Shown: one piece after another, positions 134 to 63,941 of the stretch
How the letters are laid out: each line of letters starts with the position of its first letter
How positions within the stretch are numbered: the stretch's first letter is position 1
DNA from: Mytilus trossulus
Taxonomy: Eukaryota
Length of the DNA stretch: 64,000 nt
NCBI RefSeq assembly: GCF_036588685.1
Contig: NC_086380.1
Span: 20,832,001 to 20,896,000, forward strand
Direction: 5' to 3'
The notes under the pieces: model-generated
What the model saw: the letters and a program-made list of their open reading frames with translations, nothing else
The model's database searches: none
What the model was told of the DNA's origin: nothing
Made by a program: the position numbers and the translations under genes

Positions 134-303
134 GTTTACGATTGATCAACTGTTGTATGAGAAGAAGCTGATTGTGGATATGTCCATGTCTATATGTTTG
201 GATGTGAACACAGACTGTCAGCACAACTTTGACATCTTGGTACAACAGAAATTTCCACAGCCTCTTTGTGACATGGACATGAGTGGATGGACACTCGATA
301 CAA
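134..303 (+). CDS. Module 0 (partial): exon C
   Basis: tag|GTTTACG...ACAA|gtatgt; [28 protein letters not shown]...FPQPLCDMD. Confidence 0.85.
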
Positions 304-3300
304 GTATGTCTATTATTAGATATTATTTTCCATAGAACACTATTATTAGACATAATTTTCCATAGAACACTATTATTAGACATAATTTTCCATAGAACAC
401 TATTATTAGACATAATTTTCCATAGAACACTATTATTAAATATAATTTTCCATAAAACACATTCACAGGGTATATTTTTGATACAGGGGAATATCGGTTG
501 TATAATTTTGTGGTAGACATGGAGCCATGTATGATAACCAGTAACACATTCCTTGCAATACAAGCTAACGTCTGAGACAATGTATAACAATGCAAACTCT
601 ATCAAAATTTTTTTTTAATGGAATATGATGCTATGAATAAAAAGAGATTAGCTAACATTTGAGACAACGCATAACAGTGCAAAGACCCTACATGTTCATG
701 GTAAATGTGTTTACAGTAGAGAATTCTGAATGTTAACAAACCCAAACTACATCTATTGAAATATTTTGAATCAAAACTTATTTGTTTTTATTTTAGACTC
801 CCTTGTTGACTGGGTTAAGGACAAAGGATTAGAAGCTGGACAGTCCTTGTCGACAGCTCTGGCCAATAAATTATTTGATGATTTTGGACTGACCCAGTTC
901 TTGTACAACCCTTCTTGTGACAGGTTCGGTGGAATTTACTCTGGTGCAGTCGATGGCTGGAAGGCAGATGGTAAGATTATAGAAAAAAAAAGATTTTTTA
1001 GAAATTTGATAAAATCTTTAATATGTTTTTACTTGATAGTGTGAGTCCTAGTTTGTAAAAAAATAACTCTGATTAAACAAAAAATTTCTGAAACTAACAT
1101 TGTCAAGATTTTTCATTTTTTGATTGACAACATATTTGTTACGTTTGAAGGACGTGTTTTTCAACAAACAATCAGCCTTTCAATGGGAACCAATGTGCCC
1201 CTCTTTTTGCCAACTTTTGCCTTTATTCTTATGAAGCTGACTTCATCGAAGAAACTTCTTTGGGGGAAAGAAAAGAAGTTAGCAGTATCCTTTAGTTAGA
1301 TATAAGAGGATCTGGTATGAATGCCAACTATCCTTCCAAGACGCAACTTGTGAAAGTAAACCATTATAGGTTAGTTAAAGTATGGTCTTCAACAAGGAGC
1401 CTTGGCCCACACTTAAACAGCAATCTATAAAGGACCCCAAAAATAGAGTAAAACAATTGAATAAGGAAAACCAAAGGTCTAATCTATATTAAAAAAATGC
1501 GAAACAAGAAACACCATTACAAGTGTTTATTTTAGGTTCATCTGTTATAATTTTCATCACACAAGTTACAAGATTATTTAAAAATCCAAAGAAATGAAAA
1601 TATTGGTAATTATGAATACTGTGGATTCTTTTATTTTTAATGGTACCAATTTTCATGAATTGATGAAACCTTGCTTTTTTTGTGGATATGTGATTCTGTG
1701 ATTCTGCCAAAGTCTAGATACAGTTATATGAAAAGTTGTACTTCCTTGAACATTTAAATTCATGGTTGACCTGTTCCTACAAAACCCAAGAAAATTGATA
1801 CCAAAGAATAACAATGAACCCACATTAGTTATTTTCATTTGCACAGTAACTCAACCAAACATGATATTCTTTTATTTATAGCTTGCCCAAAATCTGATGA
1901 TATGACTTTACCGAAGATTCGAGGAACAGTCAGTTGTTACATACCAGATTATTGTACAGGGATTGATTGTTGTGTGGATGTAGGAAAGATCGGCAAATCG
2001 TTCCGTATTTACGCCTTCTTAGATGCTTGTAACTGGAAGCTGAGTATCGGTATCGAGAAACTAGTCTTTAATTTCACCCTTCTGGATTATAAATGGGGTA
2101 TGTATGTTATAAAATTTAAATAATTGAATTGTTTGCTAGTCAAGATTGATTAGCAGTATATCTGATTCATTAGTTCACAGCAGAATTATTCAACTCATCT
2201 CCATTTTATTATGTTCAGGAATTGTCCAAATATTGTGATTTAAATTTGGAAATATTATTGTGAGTATAACAGTAGATGCTATGCTTATTGATACTTTGAA
2301 CATTATAGATATATGAAGAACTTCTGAACAAACGCTCTATAAAGTTTTTTGTAGGTAGAGATCCCTTCAGTGGATACTGATGGTATGCATGGTTTTCAAA
2401 AGAAATAAATCTACAATCTAGTGATATTCAGATATATGTATAATAAATAGATTTAAAAGAAAAAATATATTACTCTTCCTTGAAAAACTTAAAAACTTTT
2501 TCATCAAATACAAGTTACAAGGGGAGGTAAGTTTTGGTTAGGTATTTATATTAAAGCCTCATTAACTGTGTTTTGCCACTTTGGGATACCATGTTACAAA
2601 ACAGGGTAATATATTTTGAGACTATTATTTATTATTTTTTTAGGTGAGAAGAAAACCATGTCAATATTACAAATTCTTAAAATGGAGTAAGTATACCTAT
2701 GATCGATTTCACAACAAACCAGTAAAAGTAGGATATGGCCTATATCTGTACTTTATGTACTTATTTTTATTCGACCAGTCTAAATTTGTCCGAATATTTC
2801 ATCAACCTTACTTGCCCCAATCTTAACCATATGTATATATATATTCAAATATAAATCAATTTGAAATAGGTTATCATTTAATTGCAGCTGATACAAATTT
2901 GTATTTAATGATTGATAGAAGTTGTTACCTATACACCCAGTGGCAAATATTTCATGAATATTCAGGCAGAAAAAAACCGAACAATGAATCCTGCAGGTCA
3001 CATTGCATAGTTGGTTTTAAGTTTAAGTTTTAGTTTTGAACTGCTTAAAAAAAAGAAAAAGAAATTGTCACTTGTATTAGTTATCAAAAGTACCAGGATT
3101 ATAATTTTATATGCCAGACGCGCGTTTTGTCTACATAAGACTGGTACACTATTAGTCTGTTTAAACCTTATTTTGTAACAATATTCTATAATGATTAGCA
3201 CATTGTCAGTCAGATTTAAACAATAAACTTTATTCTTTGCAGGTACATAATTCATGACTTGCAAGCTGAGAAGAAATACATGTTAAACATGAACTTAAGT

Positions 3301-6300
3301 GTTTGTTTTGAGGAGAGTGGACCATGTCTGGTTTCTGTACCAGTATTTGAAAACACCAAACTTCCTAAACTGGGATGTGATTGGACAATAACAAACCTTG
3401 GTGAGTACCAAACTTCCTAAACTTAAATGTGATTGGACAATAACAAACCTTGGTGAGTACCAAACTTCCTAAACTTGAATGTGATTGAACACAAACAAAC
3501 CTTGGTGACTACCAAACTTCCTAAACTTAAATGTGATTGGACACAAACAAACCTTGGTGAGTACCAAACTTCCTAAACTTGAATGTGATTGGACACAAAC
3601 AAACCTTGGTGAGATATGAGTTCCAGTCTTTCATTCATAATTAAAAACTAGAATAGATTAGGTCTAGAGGCTAAAAATATAAAGAATTTTATATTAAAAA
3701 GACTATTCCTAAAACAATTCATAACAATATAGTTTGAAATGAAATGAAATGTTTTAACTTTTTTACAATTTTTCAGATTTCTCATTAAGTGACTTTAAAG
3801 CTCTGAATAGTATTACTGGAGCTGTGACAGGCCTAGCTCGTGACAAGATGCTGGAAGCTCTGGGACTGACACCATATCTGAAGGATCCATCTTGTAGCCG
3901 CACAGTGGCACCATTTGCTGGAGCCGTAAATGGATGGACCAATGGTATGTATATATTTTGTATATTTTTGGATGCAACCAAAATGAAATATACTTATTAA
4001 AGAGAGGCAGACAAAGAGACATTCAAACCCAAAAGTTTTAGAAAAAGTGAAATGACCATAGAAAAAAATACAAGGACTGAGAAACAGTACTTCACAAGGC
4101 ATTTACAAGTGTTTCATAATATAAAAATACTAATATAGTAATTATTTTCTCAACAATTTTAGAAACTTAATCTTTCTTTTTATTTATACTTGAATTTATC
4201 CGTAAATGAAAAATGATTGTTTTATAGTTTTTTTTCTTCTTGTTAATACAAATACAATAATTAGTTGTACATTATTTGTATTTTCAGAGTGTCCTGTGTC
4301 CCTGCCATACCCGTTACAGCCAATTAGCTCCAGCATACCACTAAGGTGTAGCCTCACGGACACCTGTACTGGTGTTACATGCTGTTTAGATATAGCTGAC
4401 TTTGATCTGGCTGTTAACTTTTACATCAGTTTGGATGCTTGTAATTACCAGTTTTCAGCTGGAATTGAAAATTTACCATACAACAAGTCATTGTTAAACT
4501 ATGAGTTTGGAACGGAGGAAATTATAAGTCTGTCTGATGTCGTTCGCTTGAAGTGAGTTATTTTTTATTAAAGATTTGTAGTCTAATTTTTTTATAGTGA
4601 AAAAGATTTGATTTAAACTTTATATGTAAATTTTTTTAAAGGCATATTTCTTAAAAAAAAAAACACCATGTGACTTTTATGCGCATCTGGTGTAAGAAAA
4701 TTGGTACCGTTAATTGTATTACTACCACTGGGTCGATGCCTCTGCTGGTGGACTATTAGTCCCAGAGGGTATCACCAGCCCAGTAACTTGTACTTTGGTA
4801 CTGGCATGAAAATACGGATTTTTTGTGTTATTAAAAATTGCTGTTACAAAATGTTAGAAATTTTTATGAATTAAGGAATGTATCTCCCTCATGCAAAGCT
4901 CTGATTCCTTTCAAGGATTTGGCTATACTTTTTGGACCTTTTGGATTATAGATCTTCATCTTTTATTTAAACTTTGGATTTCAAATATTTTGGCAACGAG
5001 CATCACTGAAGAGACATGTATTGTCGAAATGTGCATCTGGTGTTAGAAAATTGGTACCGTTAATTTTATTAGAGCATTAAATAAAAATAAGTTAGAGTGA
5101 TGACCATTATTGTACTGTCAATTTATGATATCCTTTATTTCCAGGTTTACAATTGATGATTTGAAGACAGAAAAGATGTTTCTAGTAAACGCTGGAGTAT
5201 CATTATGTGTAGACAATAAACAGGCATGCCTTTATACAGTGGAGCTTATGAAAGATGTACTGCTGCCAAAACCTTTGTGTAATCTAGAGACTAAAATCTC
5301 TTTAGCTGGTAAGTAAAACCCTATGACAATATAAAACCAATATGTAATCTAGACTAAAATCTCTTTAGCTGGTAAGTAAAACCCTATGACAATATAAAAC
5401 CAATATGTAATCTAGACTAAAATATCTTTAGCTGGAAAGTAAATTTTTTGATGATAAAAATAGATACAAGAAGTGGTATGAGTGCCAGTGAGACAACTCT
5501 CCATCCAAGTCACAATTTATAAAAGTAAACCATTATAGGTCAAAGTACGGTCTTCAACACGGAGACTTAGCTCAAGTCAAACAGCAATCTAAAACTCTTA
5601 AGGCAGTAAGTAAACCTGTTGAAAATATGTTTGGTCTGTTTGACCAAATGCAAAAGACGATGTTTGCTACATTCTGTATATAATTCTATAGAAAATGTTT
5701 TCTTGAATTTAGATTTGTAACTAACTTGCACCAGTGAAATCTCAGGAAAACCGGTATCCTATATATACAAGTGAAAAATATTTATTTTGATAAAACTTTC
5801 ATAAAAAATATCAAATATTATTCTGTCTGTTCACATTACCATTTTAATGAATAATTCATATTCTCTTTCAGACATATCAGCAACTGATTTCTTGAAAAAT
5901 CAAGTTGACCAAGCTATGGATTTTATGCCAGACTATGTCTCAGATCTGTTCATGGAAGCCACCGGTGTCAAACAGTACATGGAAGAACCGTCCTGTAGCA
6001 GGAGTAGTACCCCTTACTCTCCTTCAACAGACGGATGGAATAAAGGTTAGTACTTTTAGACAGAAGAACCATCCTGTAGCAGGAGTAGTCCCCCTTACTC
6101 TCCTTCAACAGACGGATGGAATAAAGGTTAGTACTTTTAGACAGAAGAACCATCCTGTAGCAGGAGTATTCCCCCTTACTCTCCTTCAACAGACGGATGG
6201 AATAAAGGTTAGTACTTTTAGACAGAAGAACCATCCTGTAGCAGGAGTAGTCCCCCTTACTCTCCTTCAACAGATGGATGGAATAAAGGTCAGTTCATTT

Positions 6301-9300
6301 GATGGTCAAAGATTGAGTCTATGCTCAATCTGAAAACAAGCTATTGTTGCGATAAGATTGGTGTCAAATAATCTGTAGACTTTTACCAATGAATGCCTCC
6401 AAGGCTTTCACATCAATTGTTTTGTGCTTTATATATTAAGGTACAACTCAGATTCTTAAGATTGATCTTAACACAAACAGATTTTAAACAACTTTTTATT
6501 AATTTTCTTCTCATAAGACTAATATTTTGATATCTACCTTTTTTATTTGTATTTAGTTAACAGTATAGACAAATCATAATTTAGCAGTATCTATATTTAG
6601 GGTTTTATATATTTAGCATCGAGTCACATTGGGAATTCTGCTGTTTTGATAAAATGCCTGAGTGGTTCAGAAATAAAACTATTTTTGTCAGATAGGTACT
6701 GAAGTGGTGCTATTCTATTATGCTTCCTTTATAAAACTTTGATATTGAAAAAATTGAACCATAATTGACATGTTCTCAATCAAAACATAATTCTAGCATT
6801 TGGTGAATGTTATTTTAAAAAAGAGGGAGGGTAGGAGGGGTTCTGATCCCGAATTCCCAGGCTTAAAAACACGAAATCCCGAAATCCTGGGCTTAAAAAC
6901 AAGAAATCCTGGGGTCCCGAAATTCAAAAACAAGAATTCCCAGATCCCGAAAGGGTCAATCCTGAAATCCCAAGCTTAAAAACACCCGATTCGGGAGTCT
7001 CAATAAAGGTGCTATTCCCCCACAAAAAAGCATGCCTGGTTTTTTGTTGATATTTGTCTTATACAATTGTATCTTTTTTTTAGAATGTCCATTAGACATA
7101 ACACTACCAGAGATACCTAGCAATATCCCTGTATCATGTCACATACCAGATTATTGCACCGGTATACAATGTTGTGTGGACGTTGAGTTTATAAAGAAGT
7201 CCTTCCACTTCTACATACTGTTAGATGGTTGTCAGTACAGAATCAAAGCTGGAATAGATAGATTTGGCATAGATGAGGCCTTCTTTTCTTTTGATAGTGG
7301 TAAGTGGATGAGGCCTTTCTTTTCATTTGATAGTGGTAAAATAATCGCCGCGATATAATAGCCTTTTTGTGCTAATGCGGCGTAAAGCAGCCAACAATCA
7401 ATCAATCAATCAATTGATAGTGGTAAGTGTTTTGTTTTATAATGGCTCAGCATTGATGATGTAGTAGCTCTTTAATTTTCTCGTTTTAAAGCAAAAAATC
7501 CCAGATTGTGATTTTTCCATAAAATGACATGACATGATACAAAAAAAGATGCCATCTTGGTTTTACAATTTTCATTAATAAGTATAATATTCTGTTTACT
7601 CTTATTGTATAAGATTGTAAGATTTATATATATAATTATCCATTCACAAACCATTTCAAATGTCCATCATCACAATTTGTACAATTGTAAAAGTACCTAA
7701 ATCAGAAAAGAAGAATTTGTAGATTTTGATGATTTGAAGAAAATTTCACATAACATGTATTTGAAAAATGCATCTATGCCTGAGAACCTAATACTGTATT
7801 ATTTTTACTGCTTTTATGATAATATATATGTGAAATTTATGGCACTTTCATTTTTCAGGTATGGTGAAAAACCTTAAGTTGGGCAACATCATGTTTTTAG
7901 AGTGAGTATTACAGATTTAAGGAGGCTCGCGGGTATAAGATTTTCAGAAAAAAAATAAACATTGATTTTTCAATACAAATTTTATTTATAACCTTTGATA
8001 GTTGTAACTTTATCATTTGGTACAAAAATCGTTCCAAAAAATAAATTTGTGTTGACCCCAGGTGACTTTTAAAATGTAGATATCATGTAAAAAGCTCCAA
8101 ATTATCTCCCTTTGGTGCAAAAATGCCATTTTTTGGCATTAGAATTGAAATATCTTTTTTAACTTATCGGTGACCTATATTTTTTATTGTTGTTTTCAAA
8201 TAAGCTGTACATAAACTAAATAATTGTAAAATTTGAGCGATTTCTGTAATTTAGTTCTTTTTTTATTTCGATATTACCGTTTTTTCTCCTATTAGTTCAA
8301 CAGAAAAAGAGGACATCAACAAAAATGTATGCTTCTTTCGAAGGCAGATTGTGAGCGTAAATGAACGGTGACCCCATTTTTTTATTTCATTTTTCTATTA
8401 AGTATAAGATTAAGTTCATTTATAGAAAAATAAAGAGAAATCCTATATTGAATAAAAAAAATCATTTAGACCCGCGAGCCCCCTTAAGTATTTAAATTGG
8501 CTGTTCTGTTTCAAACAAGTCTATATCATTAGCTCACCTGGCCCAAAGGGCCAAGTGAGCTTTTCCCATCACTTGGCATCCGGCTTCCGGCGTCGGCGTC
8601 CATCGCTGTCGTCCGTCGTCGTTGTCCGGCGTCGTTACCTTTTACAAAATCTTATAGATTTTATTATAGATAGAGATAAACTGTTTACAGCATTAATGTT
8701 CAGCAAAGTAAGATTAACTAATAAGTCAACATGACCGAAATGGTCAGTTGACCCCTTAAGGAGTTATTGCCCTTTATAGTCAATTTTTAACCCTTTTTCG
8801 TAAATCTTGGTTATCTTTACAAAAATCTTCTCCTCTGAAACTACAGGGCCAAATTAATCCAAACTTGACAACAATCATCTTTGGGGTATCTAGTTTAAAA
8901 AATGTGTGGCGTGACCTGGTCAACCATCCAAGATGGCCGCCGTGGCTAAAAATAGAACATAGGGGTAAAATGCAGTTTTTGGCTTATAACTCAAAAACCA
9001 AAGCATTTAGAGCAAATCTGACGTGGGGTAAAATTGCTTATCAGATCAATATCGTTATTGGGTTAGTTTAAACATATTTATTTATAGTGGATTGGGAAAC
9101 AAGTTTTGCAACTTATATTAATCCCTTTCCACTTTGCGGGTGCGAGTGCTGCCTTGTAGCGGCATTAGCTTACTCCTTTTTGAAATCTACAAGGGTGTCT
9201 TTAACGTGCAAGAGATATGGCTCTCTCTTAACACAGGTCAGCCATTTAACGTCCCCTTCCAAGGGACTATCATTGTTTCCTCAAGACCATACTCGCAAAT

Positions 9301-57300: not shown

Positions 57301-60300
57301 CCCAACATCACAGATTCCACAAAATGTCACCTGACCTCAGCTTGTACTGCAGTAGAATGTTGTACTGAAATTGACTTCCTCTCAAGGTCATTCAGGACGT
57401 ACCTACATATTGACCCCTGTAAACAAATGTTGTATCTTGGAATTGAACGTTTCAATAGAAATGTTTCATTGATCCATTACATGGAAGGTAGGTACCACAT
57501 TTTTATTCGATAAAATTAAATGAGTGCTGTTTTACAGTTGGATAGTTTGCTGAATAAAATGAGGGAAATAGTCTCCAGATTTACAAACCTTTTTTTTTTT
57601 GCAATTTTTTTCAAATTTGAATTGTTTAATTCATATAAAATTTATATTCAATAGAAATGATAATGAAAATCATAAAATAGAGAAGATTTCTGTTACATTA
57701 ATATTTGTTGTTAACTTTATCACATGTTATATCATTGCTAATACTAACAAACTTTGAATCAAACATCTTAGCTGTAACTTACATAAGTTTATTCAGTGTC
57801 AGTCTGGTAAGCTTAATTGAAATAAAATATTAGTAAATCTTTGCCATTTGTTTGTTTTAGGAACCAAGAAACAGTTTGCACTTGTTGGATCAGTCATGAT
57901 TGAGTGAGTGTTGGGTTAAATTATTGTTATCTTTTTTTATTTTATTACTTTTTCCACTATTTCAGTTCAAGCATGTTTTATTGTGTGTCTGTAAATATTT
58001 GTCTCCATATTATGTCAATTTTGTTATGAAGATTAAATTTTGCATCTTCAATGAGGGATGCATGTTGTCAGGTTTCTAATCCTAGATTCATTTTATAGAA
58101 AAAATAGAAGATGACCTTTAGATGTCATCAATGTAACCTTGGCATACAAATACTTAATCTAGATCTTAAGCATAAGTTCTTGACATCTAATTTTCTATTT
58201 TCTAGTTATATGATTGAAGATATACCAGGAGAGAGTATGTACTTGGTCAGTATGAATATATCGTACTGTTACGAGGATGGACAGCCGTGTTATATGGTCA
58301 CTACAGTGTTTGACAATACCAGATTACCTAAAGATATTTGTGAATGGAAAACTGACTACCATATTCCAAGTAAGATTTCAGACTTTTAGAGGATCAAAAT
58401 ATTTAAATTGAAAAAGTTAATAAAACGTCCACATGCCAAATCATGTCAAACAAATTAAAGCTTTTAATGGTCCTAGGAAATGTGTGGTAAATTATTCACT
58501 TAGAATATATTGTTTTATTCATATAATCATTGTAAAACTAAACCTTTGACAAGCTAATAGCTAATTTTTTTTAACAATGTACCATATGATTTATGTATTT
58601 GTATGTTATGAGATAAAAGCTCTATAAAGGGCCTGTAATTGGAAATGAAATATTCTTATTCTGTTATTCTAATTGTTATGATTTATCTACAGATTTCTCA
58701 TTGGAGACATGGCAAGGAGATCAAGGATTGACGATCGGTGACCCATTACCATTGTGGGCAGAATATTTGTTGTATGAACAGACTGGATTATCTCCTTATT
58801 TACAAGACAGTCAATCTCAGTGTAGTAGAAGCAGTGCCAAGTTTAACTCATCTATTGCTGGTGGATGGATTGATGGTAAGTGTTTATAGTCCAATCAGCA
58901 GACATGTTATAAGTAAAACAAATGTTTAGTCCAATCAGAAGATGTGTTATTAAGTTTGAATTAATATGATGTTGACCATTTCTGTTATTGCACCAAGATA
59001 ATAATGATTTCAGATTTTACAATCCATACTTGTAATTCAACAATGAGAAAAATAGAAACAAAACTACTGATTTTATATATTATTGTTTTTAATTAGATAT
59101 CCAACAAGTTCATCTCATATATTATGTTCAATATATGAAAAAGAAGTATTTATATCATTCAGAATGCAGCCTGAAAACCACGGTACAGGATCTTCCTAGC
59201 AGCTACACGGATATAACATGTCATGTGACACCAAGCTGTACGAAAATCGAGTGTTGTGTTGACTCCACCAAGTTACATAGACCTTTCCACGTGGTTGTCA
59301 ACTTAGATCCCTGTGATTTTGTTATCAGTGTTGGAATTGAAAACTTCCAGTACACACTGGCTATGGGAGACTATACTTTTGGTAGGTTATTGATGTTATA
59401 AAAATAGAGCATATGCCAATACACATGATTAACAGTACCTGGGGATGTTAATCATGTGTATTGGCATATGCTCTATTTTATTACTTTCACATTTATCTCC
59501 GCTGATACACCCTATTAATATAGCTTCTTTTTATGAAAGCTCCATTTGGAGCTAATGTCAAGTAGTGTAATGTGTTTAGAGACCTCTTATGTCAGTACAT
59601 CTTTTCTATATTGCCTAGATTATTTATGTTAATTTACTTTTTATAGTTTAACCCTGAAAATACGAGAAATATTCCCACTACACTTACATATTGCAATTAT
59701 AAATCATTCCTAAGAAATAATTATAGAATGTATATTGGTAGTAATATGGTAAAGAAATTAGACAAATATTATAAATCATGAACATTCATTTTGTTGCTTT
59801 GTCTAGTGCAGTAAACAAACTTATTTTTGTGACATTTGAGATACCAGTGTCTTATTTTAATATCTATTTTAGGTGAACAGAGGAACTTCTCCTTAGGAGG
59901 AATAGTCAAAACACAGTAAGTCATATGAAAAAAAAATCATTGAATCTAAAACTGGTTGTGGTCCAGAATTGATGTTTCAGGGATCCAAAGAAAATTTCAT
60001 GGTTTTGGGTTCAAATGTTGAGTTCTAATGTATGTGACTGCAAATATTTGTTAAGGATGTTTAAGAAATTTATCTTGCCAAAAAATGAATAAATAAAATT
60101 GATTGTTGGAACATTTTATTGCACAGACATGAAATGCATTACATTGGGAACTTTTGAAAGACAAAGGACCTTTAATATTTTAAAAGAAAGAAATGATGAG
60201 GATTGTTTCTACAGAAATTATTTGTATTTCTGTCGATTTAATAGTTATATACATTTTTCTCCTTATTTTATTTTATTGAATTGTATTTTGTGTTTTATAG

Positions 60301-63300
60301 ATTTGCTGTGTATCATATTGAGTCAGAACATGCTTACCTGATAGATATGAACATTTCTGTCTGTACTGAGAGTTCCCAGGCTTGTGAGCAAGATTATGTC
60401 ATAGCACAAAATGTCCTTCTTCCCAAAAAACAATGTACATGGGACGCAGGATTCGTTCATCAGAGTAAGTTCATTATTATATTTTTACATAAAATTCTAA
60501 CTTATGTTATAGTGAATACACTAATAAATACCACACAAAATAGGTAAATTTAAACGTATTTCAAGAGAATTGATCTTATATTCTTGCTCATTATTTTTAC
60601 TGTAATAATGGCTAAAACCTTTCAAAGACCTCTTAAGGTGATACTCAACACCTGAACTAAAATTAATTTGGCTCCTTTAATTTTCTAAAAATTTTGACAA
60701 AGTATTTGACCCTTTGACAAAAATATAAAAAATTCAAATAATTTGAACCATAAGTTTAATCAGAAAAATTAAACTGGTGATGTTACAGAGTTACCTCCCT
60801 GTAGTGTTAGGTACCACCTTAAATGGTAAGTTCATGGTTATCCATAAAATGCACATATACAAACACAAAATATGGTAATGCAATTTGAAAGAATGTCATT
60901 ATAGTATATTTATCTTTTTTCAGACTTTTCTTTAGCCCATTTTAAGACTGATAATCAAATCTCTGGAAACTTGGAAAGCAATGATGCGTCTCGGTTTTTG
61001 GATGAAGCCTTTGTATCGTATTACCTGCTAGCTACACCATGTGATCGAAGCGATGATAACTTGTATTTTTCGCCCACCAATGGATGGACTACAGGTTAGT
61101 GAACAGAGTAATAGGGGTCGTAGAATATACAGTTGACAGCCTATCTGTTTGGGGGGAGGGGTTGTTAGATATACAGTTGACAGCTTATCTGTTAGGGGAG
61201 GGGGTTAGGATATACAGATGACAGCTTATCTGGTTGTTAGGATATACAGTTGACAGTTTATCTGTTAGGGGAGGGGGTTAGGATATACAGTTGAAAGCCT
61301 ACATGATACACTCATAAGTTGAATTTTTCGACTACTGTATATTCAGAAATAATTGTGCGCATTTATTGTTTCAAATTAGAAAAATGGTAGACTAATTATT
61401 GCGATTTCAAGTAAATCTGTATACTGATATATGTATCAGATTTCAGAATGTGAGTTCTTATTATTGTGATACTGTAAACCAACTTATTTTCGCTTGCGAT
61501 TTATTTTCGTGACTTTCACAAGTAGAAAAATAACGCGAATATAAATCGTCGCAAATATGTTAAACTTGGAGCTTTCAATATTAAGCTACGGCATTTAAAT
61601 GAAAAAATCGCGAAGTTGACTAGTAAGGGTAAAAGGCGAAATAAAAGTATCCGCGAATATAAGTTGGTTTACAGTACTCACCCAGTGACATTATTGGCAA
61701 TAATCTTTTGGGGGTAATTTTGCGTTAAAACATGGACTTAGCAATATTTATACAGTTGTAAGATTATATATAAATTATGAAATCAGCATACTATATATAA
61801 TTTATTTTTTCAGCTTGTTCTGATGTGCCTACAAGTAGCTTGCCAGCACTTGCCAATACAGTTTCATGTAGCGTTGATAATAACTGTGAAAAGTTTACAT
61901 GTTGTTTTGAGGAAACAGAAGTAGGTCGAAGTATCCAGACCAGTGTTCATATAGATTCATGTAAAGGAGAGCTGATTGTTACTCTCGAGAGAATGACTCG
62001 AACCATTTCTTTGATTGGCTATGTTTGGGGTAATTATTTATATATGTTTTTAGCAAGCCTTCAAAATTTGAAAAAATGTCATAGTAAATTTCAGGACAGA
62101 AAATAAAAAAAGATTTCAAATTTTATTTTAATTTTTAAAAAAAATGTATAAATAAATTTTCAATTTTCATGATATAATTGATACAAGTTCTCCCACAGTC
62201 TAGAAACAATGCATAAAATAATGAAGAAGTTATTACATTTTTACCTGTATTAAATGTACAATTTTAAACTACTGATGAAAATAAGATTAACAAAAATTGC
62301 TTGTACATGAATGAATGTGCAATTCCACTTCTATAAATGATATTAACAATACCTTGATATTTTAGGAACGGAGGAACTGTACAAATTAAATGGAGTGTAT
62401 GGCCTTAGGTAATTTAAAACATTAAATTATAGCAGTGACGATTAAAATCTAAAAAAACAATACAACCAATGGTTTACATATTTGTCTGCACATTGCAAAA
62501 ATTATCATATCACTTTATTACCACTGGTTTCGTGTATTAAACTAAAGAGATGTCGTATGATTGCCAGTGAAACAACTATTCACCAAATTGCAAATTAAGT
62601 TGATGAAGTCAATTAGAGGCAGCCTTTAATAATGAGAAAAACCCATAACATATGGTCAGCCATTAATGGCCCCGATATGAAAATATGAAACCATTCCAAT
62701 AAGAAAACCAACAACCTAATTTGTGACAAAAAACAAATATGAAAAGTTATAATTACATAGTGCATAATTGTAAGAGTTTATGTATAAAACATGACATTGT
62801 ATTGTAGGTTTACAGTGAACAACCTGATAACAAGAAATAAGTATTTAGTGAGCATGGACTTGATGGCTTGTTATGAGGCCAACGGTGCATGTGCTTTACA
62901 AGAAACAATCCTCACAAACTTTGAACTTGTAAAGCAAGAGTGTGATAGGGCAACAGGTTTTATTAATCCCCAGTGTGAGTATTAATTTATTTACCTTTCA
63001 TTAAGCTTTTTTCTTTCTTTACTTTTAAAAAAGAATGATTTTTAGAGTAAACATTTTACAAAGTTGTTTCTTCATGTCCACTTTATAATACAAGAAATGT
63101 TAACTGATTCTCAAAATGATGTGGGTTTCATTTGTTAAAAAGTGTTCAAAACATTACTTTTCAACAGCAAAATATTTCACTTACACCTTACCACAAAGTA
63201 ATAGCATAGAATATCTGCTTACAGTTTCCTATAGTACCTGGGTGTCATCAGTTGGTCTTCCAGCCGATACTTCACCATTACCAGAATGGGCCATATTACA

Positions 63301-63941
63301 GCTGACCGATGACCTTGAGGTCAATAATTACTTCAGTCTTGACCACAAGTGTTACAATGTTATGGATCCATTTATGACAGGAAATTGGACAAATGCAACA
63401 ACTGGCTTCAATAACGGTATGTATTATGTTAGAAAACTTTTAGTGTTATTTTGATTTTTTGAACACTTATATAGAAGATAAGTACAATGTAAAATATATA
63501 GATTCCATCACTGCAACAAGTGTATTTTCCCACTCTATACAGTTAAATCGAAATATTTAATGTGTGAGGCTTGCTGAGCTTTTTAAATAATTGTTCCTCT
63601 AATAATAATTATAATAAGATTTTATAAACGTATATATTGCAAACTGTAAACATATACAAATTTATTTTTTTTGCTTTTTCAGATTGCAGTTTATCAATTT
63701 CACACAATAATTTTACCGAAGCTGATACCATCGTGTGTAGTATCCCCACAGACTGTAATGGGGTACGATGCTGTGTTGATGTGCCTCAGCTTGATACATC
63801 ACTGGAATATAAAATGATTCTGGACACTTGTGGTAATAGACTACGACTTAAAGTGGACAAACTGGAAACAGACATATCATTACATGATTATGAATTTGGA
63901 TCCAATTCCAAATTTTCTATATACAGCTTAGCTGAAATAAA
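134..63941 (+). CDS. Internal part (95 exons, ~5,384 codons) of a giant multi-exon gene encoding a probably secreted protein made of ~27 tandem ~200-aa 10-Cys modules; 5' and 3' ends lie outside the window
   Basis: All exons are bounded by AG/GT. Phases are consistent throughout (D 1-1, A 1-1, B 1-2, C 2-1) and exon lengths fit them (D and A are 0 mod 3, B and AB are 1, C is 2). Motifs recur in every module: CC, LDPC, IGIE, YxWG, DL..E..YLV.M..S.C, LPK..CDW, FSL..W, NGW. N-x-S/T sequons are frequent. Confidence 0.92.
310..460. repeat. 30-bp intronic minisatellite, ~5 copies
   Basis: Unit ctattattagacataattttccatagaaca; source of the repetitive ORFs 102..605, 283..516 and 323..595. Confidence 0.9.
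797..3400 (+). CDS. Module 1: exons D 797-970, A 1882-2097, B 2644-2686, C 3243-3400
   Basis: GT-AG boundaries; [45 protein letters not shown]. Confidence 0.9.
1080..1292 (+). mobile_element. Decayed reverse-transcriptase fragment, Penelope-like retroelement
   Basis: From 1120 it translates [25 protein letters not shown]-(1-nt deletion)[17 protein letters not shown], matching the PLE RT motif QQxxGIPMGTNCAPLLADLFLYSYE. Confidence 0.75.
3355..3613 (+). repeat. 52-bp tandem repeat (5 copies) spanning the 3' end of exon C1 and its donor
   Basis: Unit accaaacttcctaaact..atgtgattggaca..aacaaaccttggtgagt at 3355, 3407, 3459, 3511, 3563. Confidence 0.92.
3777..5308 (+). CDS. Module 2: exons D 3777-3944, fused AB 4288-4552, C 5145-5308
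   Basis: GT-AG boundaries; module motifs; no intron between A and B. Confidence 0.9.
4681..5068. mobile_element. Interspersed element bounded by ~35-bp direct repeats
   Basis: gcatctggtgt(a/t)agaaaattggtaccgttaatt at ~4683 and ~5033; class uncertain. Confidence 0.5.
5278..5441 (+). repeat. ~63-bp tandem repeat spanning the 3' end of exon C2 and its donor
   Basis: tgtaatctagactaaaatctctttagctggtaagtaaa present 3 times; third donor mutated to gaaagt. Confidence 0.88.
5460..5592 (+). mobile_element. Dispersed repeat family 1 (other copies ~1300-1520, 10155-10350 minus, 19780-19858 minus, 53667-53770, 54655-54706 minus, 62548-62740)
   Basis: Shared core gtggtatgagtgccaatgagacaactctccatccaag...gtaaaccattataggt in both orientations. 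Confidence 0.75.
5872..10843 (+). CDS. Module 3: exons D 5872-6045, A 7084-7299, B 7859-7901, and exon 10503-10843 (C fused to D of module 4)
   Basis: GT-AG boundaries; [18 protein letters not shown]; DLQAEKK; ORF 10507-10908 runs C into D without an intron. Confidence 0.9.
5982..6292 (+). repeat. 81-bp tandem repeat (4 copies) spanning the 3' end of exon D3 and its donor
   Basis: Unit gaagaacc.tcctgtagcaggagta..ccccttactctccttcaacagacggatggaataaaggttagtacttttagaca. Confidence 0.93.
6825..7021. repeat. GC-richer insertion with internal gaaatccc/gcttaaaaac subrepeats (probable non-autonomous transposon)
   Basis: Repeated cccgaaatcc and gcttaaaaacac motifs; G-rich start and C-rich end. Confidence 0.5.
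7340..7413 (+). mobile_element. 5'-truncated retroposon (SINE/LINE 3' end) with (AATC)n tail and 13-bp target-site duplication
   Basis: gctaatgcggcgtaaagcagccaacaatcaatcaatcaatcaa flanked by ttgatagtggtaa at 7327-7339 and 7414-7426; a similar tail occurs at ~38858-38880. Confidence 0.75.
7921..8483. mobile_element. Non-autonomous TIR element in a TTAA site (Kolobok-type MITE)
   Basis: TTAA|ggaggctcgcgggtataa ... ttagacccgcgagccccc|TTAA. Confidence 0.8.
8529..9842 (+). mobile_element. Non-autonomous Helentron/HINE (DINE-1-like) element
   Basis: TT-flanked; 5' subTIR agctcacctg with nearby IR caagtgagct; (cgt/gtc)n microsatellite; internal repeats (agatagagataaactgt..cagcaaagtaagatt at ~8667, ~9493, ~9683); 3' aggtgagc plus hairpin aggctct-tt-agagcct. 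Confidence 0.8.
9065..9412 (-). mobile_element. tRNA-derived SINE nested in the HINE element
   Basis: Minus strand begins gagccgtggtgtagtggtaag (A box) ... cttcgattccc (B-box-like); central gcacgttaaaga motif; 13-bp TSD tcgttattgggtt at 9052-9064 and 9413-9425. Confidence 0.85.
11062..11938. mobile_element. Non-autonomous hAT-type transposon
   Basis: TIR cagggtttcc/ggaaaccctg; perfect 8-bp TSD actaagac (11054-11061, 11939-11946); subterminal tggcgaa repeats. Confidence 0.88.
12147..13413 (+). CDS. Module 4: exons A 12147-12371, B 12912-12954, C 13253-13413 (divergent; four Cys lost)
   Basis: ECLGG...RCTYIDFC...[14 protein letters not shown]...YNWG; LPIPACDYD. Confidence 0.85.
12424..12642 (+). 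mobile_element. Short HINE/Helentron-like element
   Basis: ttatacccc start, tctg microsatellite, ggggtat end followed by hairpin gtgag..ctcac. Confidence 0.55.
12740..12848. repeat. 31-bp minisatellite, ~3.5 copies
   Basis: Unit tcattgtgtagttttatgttgtatgacaatg. Confidence 0.9.
15076..17186 (+). CDS. Module 5: exons D 15076-15324, A 16079-16291, B 16647-16689, C 17023-17186
   Basis: GT-AG boundaries; module motifs; elongated D exon. Confidence 0.87.
15460..15592 (+). mobile_element. Dispersed repeat family 2 (other copies ~12683-12735, 22795-22930 minus, 23650-23740 minus, 28880-29030, 43025-43180); here nested in a tactgtggattca MITE
   Basis: Shared core aaaattgagaatggaaatggggaatgtgtcaaagagacaacaaccc. 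Confidence 0.75.
17522..19110 (+). CDS. Module 6: exons D 17522-17692, A 17978-18187, B 18410-18452, C 18947-19110
   Basis: GT-AG boundaries; [21 protein letters not shown]. Confidence 0.88.
18588..18799. mobile_element. TA-flanked MITE (Tc1/mariner-type); degenerate copies ~1616-1830, 15361-15700, 30900-31093
   Basis: TIR tactgtggattcatt / aatgaatccacagta. Confidence 0.8.
19583..20828 (+). CDS. Module 7: exons D 19583-19756, AB 20034-20286, C 20650-20828
   Basis: GT-AG boundaries; [20 protein letters not shown]. Confidence 0.88.
21216..22510 (+). CDS. Module 8: exons D 21216-21398, AB 21694-21949, C 22347-22510
   Basis: GT-AG boundaries; module motifs. Confidence 0.9.
23003..24675 (+). 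CDS. Module 9: exons D 23003-23179, AB 24024-24276, C 24512-24675
   Basis: GT-AG boundaries; [23 protein letters not shown]. Confidence 0.88.
25337..26990 (+). CDS. Module 10: exons D 25337-25522, AB 26231-26483, C 26827-26990
   Basis: GT-AG boundaries; module motifs. Confidence 0.9.
27232..28829 (+). CDS. Module 11: exons D 27232-27411, AB 27966-28224, C 28666-28829
   Basis: GT-AG boundaries (AB donor gttatt is weak but positionally conserved); D lacks Cys and CC is CA. Confidence 0.86.
29377..30870 (+). CDS. Module 12: exons D 29377-29544, AB 29853-30108, C 30707-30870
   Basis: GT-AG boundaries; module motifs. Confidence 0.9.
30541..30652 (+). pseudogene. Degenerate duplicate of the acceptor and 5' part of exon C12
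   Basis: ttag|tttcgtgttagataatct...atgaatatatcagtatgtctagcatcaggaggggcgtgtgaagtgttaac parallels the exon from 30707; in-frame TGA after FVLDNLTI. Confidence 0.8.
31288..32751 (+). CDS. Module 13: exons D 31288-31464, AB 31814-32066, C 32588-32751
   Basis: GT-AG boundaries; [19 protein letters not shown]. Confidence 0.9.
33064..34840 (+). CDS. Module 14: exons D 33064-33237, AB 33933-34185, C 34671-34840
   Basis: GT-AG boundaries; module motifs. Confidence 0.9.
35182..38082 (+). CDS. Module 15: exons D 35182-35358, AB 35863-36118, C 37922-38082
   Basis: GT-AG boundaries; module motifs. Confidence 0.88.
36168..37685. mobile_element. Non-autonomous TIR element (outer) with a nested insertion
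   Basis: TIR ccaaaggagtaggtccggtaag / cttactggacctactcctttgg. Confidence 0.8.
36742..37656. mobile_element. Nested CA...TG TIR element with 6-bp TSD
   Basis: cagacatgtga ... tcacatgtatg flanked by aagagg (36736-36741, 37657-37662). Confidence 0.7.
38095..38304. mobile_element. ~210-bp TA-flanked MITE (Tc1/mariner-type)
   Basis: TIR tactgtaaattcagaaattattgcg / cgcaataatttctgaatttacagta. Confidence 0.85.
38911..39388 (+). repeat. 122-bp tandem repeat (4 copies) spanning the acceptor and 5' part of exon D16
   Basis: atttcag|a(c/t)ttttca(c/t)tggaacagtggag with exon-like starts at 38919, 39041, 39163, 39285. Confidence 0.93.
39285..40964 (+). CDS. Module 16: exons D 39285-39458, A 39790-39999, B 40465-40507, C 40801-40964
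   Basis: GT-AG boundaries; only the last of four duplicated acceptors gives an open D exon. Confidence 0.85.
41430..41630. mobile_element. Interspersed repeat fragment
   Basis: ctgcttacccttccggagcacctgagatcacccccagtttttggtggggttcgtgttg, recalled as a common bivalve repeat (not verified); degenerate reverse copy near 15760-15850. Confidence 0.55.
41833..43393 (+). CDS. Module 17: exons D 41833-41994, AB 42239-42497, C 43224-43393
   Basis: GT-AG boundaries; module motifs. Confidence 0.88.
42688..42897. mobile_element. MITE, same family as 38095-38304
   Basis: TIR tactgtaaattcagaaattattgc / gcaataatttctgaatttacagta. Confidence 0.85.
43775..45752 (+). CDS. Module 18: exons D 43775-43948, A 44235-44444, B 45090-45132, C 45589-45752
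   Basis: GT-AG boundaries; module motifs. Confidence 0.88.
44070..44202 (+). pseudogene. Partial duplicate (151-bp period) of the acceptor and 5' part of exon A18
   Basis: acag|actgtacattgat at 44084 vs 44235; [20 protein letters not shown] vs DGDIVCLIG; read-through hits a stop. Confidence 0.85.
44688..44895. mobile_element. MITE, same family as 38095-38304 (degenerate copies ~50713-50886, 61333-61470)
   Basis: TIR tactgtaaattca / tgaatttacagta. Confidence 0.85.
45775..46045. mobile_element. TTAA-type (Kolobok-like) MITE; inverted copy at 60637-60818
   Basis: ggtggtacctaacac ... gtgttgggtaccacc|ttaa. Confidence 0.78.
46409..48427 (+). CDS. Module 19: exons D 46409-46570, A 47185-47397, B 47928-47970, C 48261-48427
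   Basis: GT-AG boundaries; D lacks Cys and CC is CS. Confidence 0.88.
46481..46871 (+). repeat. 130-bp tandem repeat (3 copies) spanning the 3' end of exon D19 and its donor
   Basis: atgacc.tgaagaagtc...tggaataatg|gtaagtccc at 46481, 46611, 46741. Confidence 0.93.
48509..48893. repeat. AT-rich ~75-80-bp tandem repeat, ~5 copies
   Basis: Unit gcaataagttttaagttgttttttatttaatttacaatgtacaactaatttttacaaggtaattt. Confidence 0.85.
49081..50708 (+). CDS. Module 20: exons D 49081-49254, A 49662-49874, B 50141-50183, C 50545-50708
   Basis: GT-AG boundaries; module motifs. Confidence 0.9.
51137..52511 (+). CDS. Module 21: exons D 51137-51292, A 51562-51771, B 52025-52067, C 52348-52511
   Basis: GT-AG boundaries; module motifs. 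Confidence 0.9.
52881..54541 (+). CDS. Module 22: exons D 52881-53054, A 53320-53529, B 53865-53907, C 54378-54541
   Basis: GT-AG boundaries; C exon lacks both central Cys. Confidence 0.88.
54498..54611 (+). repeat. 63-bp-period duplication of the 3' end of exon C22 and its donor
   Basis: atctaaggagcaatgtgattggagctcaga.ttccata...gttagta at 54498 and 54561. Confidence 0.88.
55018..56556 (+). CDS. Module 23: exons D 55018-55185, A 55506-55715, B 56105-56147, C 56384-56556
   Basis: GT-AG boundaries; module motifs. Confidence 0.9.
56975..58369 (+). CDS. Module 24: exons D 56975-57142, A 57278-57487, B 57861-57903, C 58206-58369
   Basis: GT-AG boundaries; module motifs. Confidence 0.9.
58693..60464 (+). 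CDS. Module 25: exons D 58693-58875, A 59163-59381, B 59873-59915, C 60301-60464
   Basis: GT-AG boundaries; module motifs. Confidence 0.9.
59401..59479. repeat. Perfect 34-bp inverted repeat with an 11-nt loop
   Basis: aaaatagagcatatgccaatacacatgattaaca-gtacctgggga-tgttaatcatgtgtattggcatatgctctatttt. Confidence 0.93.
60637..60818. mobile_element. TTAA-flanked MITE, same family as 45775-46045
   Basis: TTAA|ggtgatactcaacacc ... gtgttaggtaccacc|TTAA. Confidence 0.78.
60924..62974 (+). CDS. Module 26: exons D 60924-61094, A 61814-62029, B 62366-62408, C 62808-62974
   Basis: GT-AG boundaries; module motifs. Confidence 0.9.
61124..61300. repeat. ~42-bp G-rich minisatellite, ~4.5 copies
   Basis: Unit gatatacagttgacagcttatctgttaggggagggggttag. 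Confidence 0.85.
61470..61676. mobile_element. TA-flanked MITE
   Basis: TIR tactgtaaaccaactta / taagttggtttacagta. Confidence 0.82.
63225..63941 (+). CDS. Module 27 (partial): exons D 63225-63416, AB 63683-63941
   Basis: GT-AG boundaries; CNGVRCC, LDTC, YEFG; continues beyond the window. Confidence 0.88.

What the first reader, a model, noticed from the sequence alone, without database searches (positions are those of the whole stretch)
134..63941. Giant protein built from ~27 tandem copies of an unrecognised ~200-aa, 10-cysteine module
Seen: 95 exons with consistent phases join into ~5,384 codons, and neither gene end is in the window, so the protein is larger still. Approximate consensus: FSLxxW..LLxxLGIxxYL..C..Y..NGW / C..LP..CxxxxxCTGVxCC.D..F..LDPC..IGIE..L.DYxWG / F.L.G / F.I.DL..E..YLV.MNxSxC.E..C..LPK..CDW. 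Most positions have diverged strongly between copies, but the Cys and hydrophobic pattern is fixed. Inference: a secreted, disulfide-bonded beads-on-a-string glycoprotein (matrix, mucus, egg coat, haemolymph or innate-immune scaffold). The pattern does not fit EGF, vWC, TIL, C8, SRCR, CUB, Ig or TSP1 as I know them. I vaguely recall similar repeats in very large uncharacterised invertebrate proteins with vitellogenin/VWD-type ends; this is unverified.
Basis: partly seen in the sequence, partly recalled or inferred. Interest (0 to 1): 0.85.

Follow-up and report, generated by a model that had tools for sequence, protein, structure and literature searches.

The report
Giant secreted protein, new repeated domain
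The window holds 27 of about 34 tandem copies of an unclassified 200-residue, five-disulfide domain, inside one mussel gene of roughly 170 kb that should encode a secreted protein of about 11,000 residues with a vitellogenin/apolipoprotein-type head; the genome has 15 such genes, and relatives occur from amphioxus to molluscs.

Summary

The flanks show one gene from about -52.8 kb to beyond +114.8 kb: signal peptide, a region homologous to the Vitellogenin_N head of relatives, a degenerate M23-like domain, SAP, about 34 modules, and then about 3,400 aa with faint FN3/Ig hints. The same order appears in bivalve and amphioxus gene models. It also appears at 15 loci of this genome, each with its own head upstream of a module array on the same strand. 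All public relatives are "uncharacterized".

Best reading: a new large-lipid-transfer-protein architecture carrying a new extracellular domain. The domain anatomy is shown; the single transcript is inferred from phase continuity and collinearity; function (a lipid-loaded beads-on-a-string scaffold or recognition protein) is inferred. No RNA evidence was obtained.

The parts
134..303 (+). d exon closing the module that starts upstream of the window
   Evidence: AG acceptor at 132-133, donor GT after 303, phase 2 in and phase 1 out
797..3400 (+). module 1
   Evidence: exons a 797-970; b 1882-2097; c 2644-2686; d 3243-3400; borders match P0059
3777..5308 (+). module 2
   Evidence: a 3777-3944; bc 4288-4552; d 5145-5308
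5872..10668 (+). module 3
   Evidence: a 5872-6045; b 7084-7299; c 7859-7901; d = first part of fused d+a exon 10503-10843
10669..13413 (+). module 4 (degenerate: no c exon, two Cys pairs lost)
   Evidence: a = second part of exon 10503-10843; b 12147-12371; d 13195-13413, entered in phase 1
15076..17186 (+). module 5
   Evidence: a 15076-15324; b 16079-16291; c 16647-16689; d 17023-17186
17522..19110 (+). module 6
   Evidence: a 17522-17692; b 17978-18187; c 18410-18452; d 18947-19110
19583..20828 (+). module 7
   Evidence: a 19583-19756; bc 20034-20286; d 20650-20828
21216..22510 (+). module 8
   Evidence: a 21216-21398; bc 21694-21949; d 22347-22510
23003..24675 (+). module 9
   Evidence: a 23003-23179; bc 24024-24276; d 24512-24675
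25337..26990 (+). module 10
   Evidence: a 25337-25522; bc 26231-26483; d 26827-26990
27232..28829 (+). module 11 (Cys pair C1/C6 lost)
   Evidence: a 27232-27411; bc 27966-28224; d 28666-28829
29377..30870 (+). module 12
   Evidence: a 29377-29544; bc 29853-30108; d 30707-30870
31288..32751 (+). module 13
   Evidence: a 31288-31464; bc 31814-32066; d 32588-32751
33064..34840 (+). module 14
   Evidence: a 33064-33237; bc 33933-34185; d 34671-34840
35182..38082 (+). module 15
   Evidence: a 35182-35358; bc 35863-36118; d 37922-38082
39285..40964 (+). module 16
   Evidence: a 39285-39458; b 39790-39999; c 40465-40507; d 40801-40964
41833..43393 (+). module 17
   Evidence: a 41833-41994; bc 42239-42497; d 43224-43393
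43775..45752 (+). module 18
   Evidence: a 43775-43948; b 44235-44444; c 45090-45132; d 45589-45752; a partial duplicate of the b exon at 44083-44271 is taken as intronic
46409..48427 (+). module 19 (Cys pair C1/C6 lost)
   Evidence: a 46409-46570; b 47185-47397; c 47928-47970; d 48261-48427
49081..50708 (+). module 20
   Evidence: a 49081-49254; b 49662-49874; c 50141-50183; d 50545-50708
51137..52511 (+). module 21
   Evidence: a 51137-51292; b 51562-51771; c 52025-52067; d 52348-52511; borders match P0026
52881..54541 (+). module 22 (Cys pair C8/C9 lost)
   Evidence: a 52881-53054; b 53320-53529; c 53865-53907; d 54378-54541
55018..56556 (+). module 23 (Cys pair C3/C5 lost)
   Evidence: a 55018-55185; b 55506-55715; c 56105-56147; d 56384-56556
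56975..58369 (+). module 24
   Evidence: a 56975-57142; b 57278-57487; c 57861-57903; d 58206-58369
58693..60464 (+). module 25
   Evidence: a 58693-58875; b 59163-59381; c 59873-59915; d 60301-60464
60924..62974 (+). module 26
   Evidence: a 60924-61094; b 61814-62029; c 62366-62408; d 62808-62974
63168..63941 (+). module 27, first part (its d exon lies just past the window end)
   Evidence: a 63168-63416 (acceptor uncertain; 63205 is an alternative); bc 63683-63941; next d exon at about 64174-64461

Best explanation
The window is the middle of one very large + strand gene. Its start codon is at window -52,809, and its last detected exon is beyond +114,764, so it spans at least about 170 kb.

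Each module is an autonomous, disulfide-locked extracellular domain. Exon a gives a two-helix subdomain. Exons b, c and d give an antiparallel beta sandwich of about nine strands. Five disulfides are inferred as C1-C6, C2-C4, C3-C5, C7-C10 and C8-C9. Two of them clamp the helices to the sheet (C1-C6) and b to d (C7-C10).

The module begins and ends in intron phase 1, so copies can be added in frame. The copies are old: about 30% identity regardless of distance in the array.

Inferred mechanism: the LLTP head is loaded with lipid in the secretory pathway, as in other LLTPs. The module array forms a long semi-rigid beads-on-a-string rod whose surfaces have diverged freely. The protein therefore acts as an extracellular scaffold, tether or recognition protein of haemolymph or matrix.

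Shown here: the anatomy, the fold prediction, the Cys pairing pattern and the gene family. Inferred: that all parts lie on one transcript (from phase continuity and collinearity), secretion (sequence motif only), lipid loading, rod shape and physiological role.
For: Periodic exon structure with fixed phases and intact splice sites over 94 exons and 5,408 stop-free codons.

The array continues upstream (5 more b exons back to -19.5 kb) and downstream (2 more, to +68.3 kb).

Upstream exons from -52.8 to -20.1 kb are collinear with residues 8-1176 of Potamilus P0004 and with amphioxus P0155/P0023. Downstream exons from 70.9 to 114.8 kb are collinear with Sinanodonta P0151 residues 3455-6526 and amphioxus P0010 residues 2966-5130.

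Pfam: Vitellogenin_N scores 34 and 44 bits (cut-off 24) in P0004 and P0155. SAP and M23 are found in P0004, P0152, P0022 and P0155. SAP scores 33.7 bits on this genome's own exon L004:9749-9892.

Signal-peptide-like start.

Fifteen loci in this genome each have a head exon and an M23-like exon upstream of a module array on the same strand.

AlphaFold2: single module pLDDT 84.8, pTM 0.81; two modules pLDDT 85.5.

Cys co-loss in pairs, in the window and in 116 public modules.

The profile search found 798 relatives, all unnamed, in bivalves, a nemertean, a flatworm and amphioxus.
Against: No transcript evidence was obtained. The only run found held intronic repeats and showed no splice joints.

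Public annotations cut the locus into models of 198-4,242 aa in Mytilus.

Vitellogenin_N cannot be called by Pfam on this genome's single exons; it rests on homology to orthologues.

The 3' end of the gene was not reached.

The function has no direct evidence: no lipid-binding test, no tissue data, no literature.

C2-C4 is inferred by elimination only.
Confidence: 0.75

Rival explanations
1. The array is not one gene but a cluster of several shorter genes, each with a few modules, as in current public annotations.
For: Public Mytilus models are 198-4,242 aa. No RNA reads span the junctions.
Against: All 93 introns keep compatible phases, so the frame never closes. No module carries its own signal peptide or stop. 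Models of 6,862 aa (Sinanodonta) and 5,183 aa (amphioxus) join modules to the same tail, and P0004 and P0155 join the head to modules. At 15 of 15 paralogous loci there is one head per array. Many public fragments are flagged 'partial'.
Confidence: 0.1
2. The array is a decaying, unexpressed pseudogene or a repeat expansion with no protein product.
For: No RNA evidence. Small tandem duplications at exon ends. Module 4 is degenerate.
Against: 5,408 codons without a stop in a 31% GC sequence, and all splice sites intact. The exons are 82-90% identical in protein to another Mytilus species. Cys are lost only in pairs. Fold-defining residues are kept at about 30% overall identity.
Confidence: 0.03
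3. The module is a very divergent member of an already described family (DUF4773, FAIM, ZP-N, a VWD/C8/TIL-type mucin unit, or a lipocalin-like barrel), so the domain is not new.
Confidence: 0.12

Closest known systems
Large lipid transfer proteins (vitellogenin, apolipoprotein B / apolipophorin II/I, MTP)
   Same: A signal peptide followed by the Vitellogenin_N (LPD_N) head. The literature states that all LLTPs share LPD_N and differ downstream (PMC10799875).
   Different: No DUF1943, DUF1081 or VWD was found in the relatives scanned. Instead there is an M23-like domain, SAP, about 34 copies of a new Cys-rich module and a long FN3-like tail. It is about 2.5 times the length of apoB-100. The modules are closed disulfide domains, not an open amphipathic beta belt.
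FAIM (Fas apoptosis inhibitory molecule) N- and C-terminal domains, PDB 3mx7 and 2kw1
Gel-forming mucin / FCGBP / zonadhesin type giant proteins (VWD-C8-TIL arrays)
   Same: Giant secreted proteins built from tandem Cys-rich units, encoded by phase-symmetrical exon sets.
Pfam DUF4773 (PF15998)
   Same: Small secreted Cys-containing beta proteins present in molluscs and arthropods. It was the nearest named cluster by language-model features (0.80).
   Different: HMM, reverse HMM and profile-profile tests were all negative.
Abalone VERL (tandem ZP-N repeats)
   Same: From my own knowledge, not tested here: a molluscan giant glycoprotein made of many tandem Cys-containing repeats.

Membership tests
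LLTP superfamily | N-terminal signal peptide | tested here: met
   Met plus a hydrophobic core plus a small-residue cleavage motif at L001:7191 (window -52,809), followed by the conserved start of the head domain. The same is seen in P0004 and P0155. Judged by inspection; no predictor was available.
LLTP superfamily | Vitellogenin_N / LPD_N domain above the Pfam cut-off | tested here: inconclusive
Met in orthologues: P0004 34 bits and P0155 44.3 bits (cut-off 24). This genome's exons are 64% identical to P0004 residues 482-550, which lie inside that match. Single exons give no Pfam hit.
Vitellogenin / apolipophorin subfamilies of LLTP | DUF1943, DUF1081 and/or VWD downstream of LPD_N | tested here: not met
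   None found in P0004, P0155, P0152, P0022 or P0160, nor in 30 tail exons of this gene.
LLTP superfamily | Binds and carries lipid | not testable with these tools
   Needs biochemistry.
Any Pfam-A family (for the module) | HMM match to the module | tested here: not met
   No relevant match and nothing near any family's cut-off on single exons, and 0 families on P0001 (14 modules), P0002, P0006, P0026, P0059 and P0011.
DUF4773 (PF15998) | Sequence-profile similarity | tested here: not met
FAIM fold | Structural match clearly above background, covering the domain | tested here: inconclusive
Peptidase M23 (head region, outside the window) | HxxxD and HxH zinc-ligand motifs | tested here: not met
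   HxH is present, but the His of the first motif is replaced in this gene. P0004 keeps both motifs. The Pfam match is above cut-off only in P0022, at 31.1 bits. It is probably a non-catalytic M23-like domain here.
SAP motif (head region, outside the window) | Pfam PF02037 above cut-off | tested here: met
   33.7 bits (cut-off 23.9) on L004:9749-9892. Also found in P0004, P0152, P0155 and P0022.

The most novel reading that the evidence does not exclude
These genes define a fourth, so far undescribed branch of the large lipid transfer protein superfamily. They are giant (over 10,000 aa) 'module-array' LLTPs that predate the split of chordates and spiralians, were lost in many lineages, and expanded to 15 genes in this mussel. 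They are built on a new five-disulfide domain fold with no solved or curated relative.
Probability: 0.55. Interest if true: 0.75.

Novelty: new variant of a known kind. Interest (0 to 1): 0.7.

Why it matters
If the reading holds, it adds a new curated domain family, widespread in Bilateria but missing from Pfam and from the PDB. It also adds a new architecture to the LLTP superfamily, which has been described as vitellogenins, apolipoproteins and MTP only.

It shows that current mussel annotations break genes of about 170 kb and 11,000 codons into dozens of "hypothetical" fragments. This distorts gene counts and presence/absence studies in bivalves.

A 15-gene family of this size makes up a large share of the coding DNA, so it probably has a major physiological role, such as haemolymph lipid transport or clotting, extracellular matrix, or recognition. 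That role can now be tested with defined probes and peptides.

Tried and rejected
1. Pfam on single exons and on multi-module public proteins: nothing.

2. An alignment (A2) of one public module with the a, b and d exon fragments as rows. MAFFT stacked the a and d fragments onto the b region, so A2 was discarded. Alignments of whole public multi-module proteins (A3, A4) were used for folding instead.

3. The DUF4773 lead from the protein atlas: rejected.

4. Foldseek against the PDB for both models: no hit at E <= 0.001. Profile against PDB sequences: 0 hits. phmmer of P0155 and P0004 against the PDB gave only HEAT-like artefacts.

5. RNA evidence: one run with a small share of words. It lay on intronic repeats only and showed no splice joints. 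This is no evidence either way.

7. Pfam on 30 tail exons gave only sub-threshold fn3/Ig/PKD hints. The atlas pointed to fn3-bearing mollusc clusters at 0.90. This is a lead only.

8. Literature searches found no description of the family.

The peptides were then derived from coordinates.

10. The joined spliced protein of this window was not searched or folded. Exon-by-exon references and public orthologues were used instead.

11. Other ORFs on both strands gave no credible Pfam match (the only hits, all below their cut-offs, were on the antisense of a tandem repeat). There are no Rfam families or tRNAs.

Full report
THE OBSERVATION

The window is AT-rich (31% GC). It belongs to a 1.30-Gb assembly, at G000:C8:20832001-20896000. 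Stop-free + strand segments cluster by self-BLAST into one family of 28 'b' segments and one merged family of 64 segments that holds the 'd' and 'a' exons. Alignments show three conserved exon types: a, b and d. A fourth short type, c, is fused to b in 12 units and separate in 14. The order is strictly periodic, d-a-b-c.

A junction solver that only required GT/AG and frame continuity returned the same solution unit after unit:
- a>b in phase 1, three codons after the conserved GW;
- b>c in phase 1, inside the Gly codon of the WG motif;
- c>d in phase 2;
- d>a in phase 1, about ten codons after the last Cys.

All 94 acceptors are AG and all donors GT. There are 93 introns, median 407 nt. The model has 94 exons, 16,224 nt = 5,408 codons, with no stop in any exon.

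Independent gene models from Mytilus galloprovincialis (P0059 and P0026, 82-90% identical) use the same exon borders. The genome is therefore that of a Mytilus-like mussel; this is an inference from identity.

THE MODULE

Modules are 199.3 +/- 5.6 aa. Ten Cys columns are conserved: one in a, six in b, three in d. Copies are old. The b cores share about 30% identity whether they are neighbours or twenty units apart, with a maximum of 48%.

Of the 26 modules complete in the window, 19 keep all ten Cys. The other seven lack two or four, always in the same pairs:
- C1 with C6: modules 11 and 19;
- C3 with C5: modules 4, 5, 7 and 23;
- C8 with C9: modules 4 and 22.

In 116 modules cut from public proteins, 102 of the 112 without gaps at these columns have all ten Cys. 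Joint losses there are again C3+C5 (three times) and C8+C9 (three times), plus C7+C10 (once). This gives four disulfides directly and C2-C4 by elimination. C1-C6 ties exon a to exon b, and C7-C10 ties b to d. The unit starts and ends in phase 1, the symmetry that is usual for shuffled extracellular modules (established knowledge).

IS THE MODULE KNOWN?

- Pfam-A finds nothing on single exons or on public proteins with up to 14 modules.
- A profile of 27 b exons (A1), run against 1.84 billion representative proteins, found 798 proteins at E <= 0.001 and 30 at E <= 1e-30.
- Every named hit is "hypothetical" or "uncharacterized". The species are Mytilus spp., Mya, Argopecten, Mercenaria, Potamilus, Sinanodonta, the nemertean Lineus, the flatworm Macrostomum and amphioxus.
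- A profile against all PDB sequences gave no hit.

Instead I folded the public orthologues with alignments of whole multi-module proteins:
- P0026, about two modules: pLDDT 85.5, pTM 0.63.
- P0059, exactly one module: pLDDT 84.8, pTM 0.81.

The model has two helices (exon a) followed by about nine antiparallel strands (exons b, c and d).

The protein atlas suggested DUF4773 at 0.80. The DUF4773 model hits other loci of this genome. The module HMM does not hit those loci. hhalign gives 0.35% probability. That lead is rejected.

THE GENE AROUND THE WINDOW

I fetched 60 kb on each side.

Array limits. Module exons continue upstream to -19.5 kb (five more b exons) and downstream to +68.3 kb (two more). 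That makes about 34 modules, which is a lower bound.

Upstream. Exons between -52.8 and -20.1 kb are collinear with residues 8-1176 of Potamilus P0004 and with amphioxus P0155 and P0023. These proteins carry Vitellogenin_N (34 and 44 bits; cut-off 24), a Peptidase_M23-like stretch and a SAP motif ahead of their modules. On this genome's own exons:
- SAP scores 33.7 bits.
- The M23-like exon keeps HxH but has lost the first zinc-ligand His, so it is probably non-catalytic.
- The first exon reads as Met, a hydrophobic core, a cleavage-type motif, and then the conserved start of the head.

Downstream. About 45 exons from 70.9 to 114.8 kb are collinear with Sinanodonta P0151 residues 3455-6526 and amphioxus P0010 residues 2966-5130. 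This tail is Cys-poor. It gives only sub-threshold fn3/Ig/PKD hints.

No transmembrane-like segment was seen in the relatives.

The gene therefore spans at least about 170 kb and should encode roughly 11,000-12,000 residues.

THE FAMILY IN THIS GENOME

The b profile has at least 665 candidate exons in clusters on C2, C4, C7, C8, C9 and C12. A head exon and the M23-like exon each occur at 15 places. Each of these lies upstream of one of the module clusters, on the same strand, mostly tens of kb away (one locus on C9 is hundreds of kb away). One head per array at 15 of 15 loci, together with the same order in two other phyla, is the main argument that head, array and tail are one gene and not an annotation chimera.

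WHAT ELSE IS IN THE WINDOW

Nothing else codes convincingly on either strand. Other ORFs have no credible Pfam match. There are no Rfam families or tRNAs. Introns hold repeat families and several small tandem duplications that straddle exon ends.

FUNCTION (INFERRED)

All LLTPs share the LPD_N head and differ downstream. The classes described so far are vitellogenins, apolipoproteins and MTP (PMC10799875). This protein has the head but none of DUF1943, DUF1081 or VWD. It is best seen as a new LLTP architecture.

The modules are closed, disulfide-locked domains rather than an open lipid-binding sheet. I therefore read the array as a long beads-on-a-string rod attached to a lipid-binding head, with fold residues fixed and surfaces free to diverge. 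The family expansion is compatible with a scaffold, clotting, adhesive or recognition role outside the cell. None of this has been tested.

RNA evidence could not be obtained: the single run offered lay on intronic repeats. No paper describes the family.

VERDICT

The domain is uncurated and has no solved relative. The sequences themselves are already public as fragments named "uncharacterized". I rate it a new variant of a known kind (a giant secreted LLTP-type protein carrying a new domain), interest 0.7.

Noticed in passing
window 3355-3613, 5278-5443, 5982-6294, 38911-39381, 44063-44352, 46481-46872, 54497-54624: Seven small tandem duplications (periods 52-151 bp, 2-5 copies, 87-97% matches). 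Each straddles an exon end, mostly the 3' end of an a or d exon together with its GT donor, so extra donor copies sit in the intron. A recurrent mutation pattern at splice sites of this gene; cause unknown.
   Followed up: partly
L003:2001-3827 (window -37,999 to -36,173): A tandem array with a period of about 98 bp. At least 16 units each translate to a 21-aa stretch that is 81-90% identical to Potamilus P0004 residues 568-588, the end of the Vitellogenin_N match. It is an exon-derived minisatellite inside the head region of the gene.
   Followed up: no
window 12147-13413: Module 4 is degenerate. It has no recognisable c exon, its d exon is entered in a different phase with about 20 extra codons, and two Cys pairs are lost. 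It remains in frame.
   Followed up: partly
G000:C4:53.389-53.395 Mb versus C12:28.928-28.934 Mb; C9:16.32-16.43 (+) versus 16.64-16.79 (-); C12:28.58-28.75 (-) versus 28.88-28.97 (+): Several paralogous arrays give identical scores exon by exon. They sit as inverted pairs, and the heads of the C12 pair are both 96% identical to this gene's head exon. The C4 piece has no head exon. These are either very recent segmental duplications or assembly duplicates.
   Followed up: no
G000:C7:31.898-31.909 Mb and C13:9.498 Mb (L013-L016, L018): A small tandem cluster of DUF4773 (PF15998) genes, unrelated to the module family.
   Followed up: partly
L004:2446-2652 and L004:3783-3962 (window about -27.5 and -26.2 kb): The M23-like domain keeps the HxH motif but lacks the first His ligand in this gene. 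The Potamilus relative P0004 keeps both motifs, so some family members may be active peptidases.
   Followed up: partly
window 53646-53842, 54631-54827, 55616-56000: Intronic stretches with very high summed contig depth (thousands) in the one public run laid. These are probably high-copy transposable elements of the host genome.
   Followed up: no
window 1045-1427 and 8456-9479: Intronic + strand ORF fragments. The one at 1045-1427 also has copies at 5492-5680 and, on the - strand, at 10129-10287. The first looks to me like a decayed retroelement remnant. No Pfam hit.
   Followed up: partly
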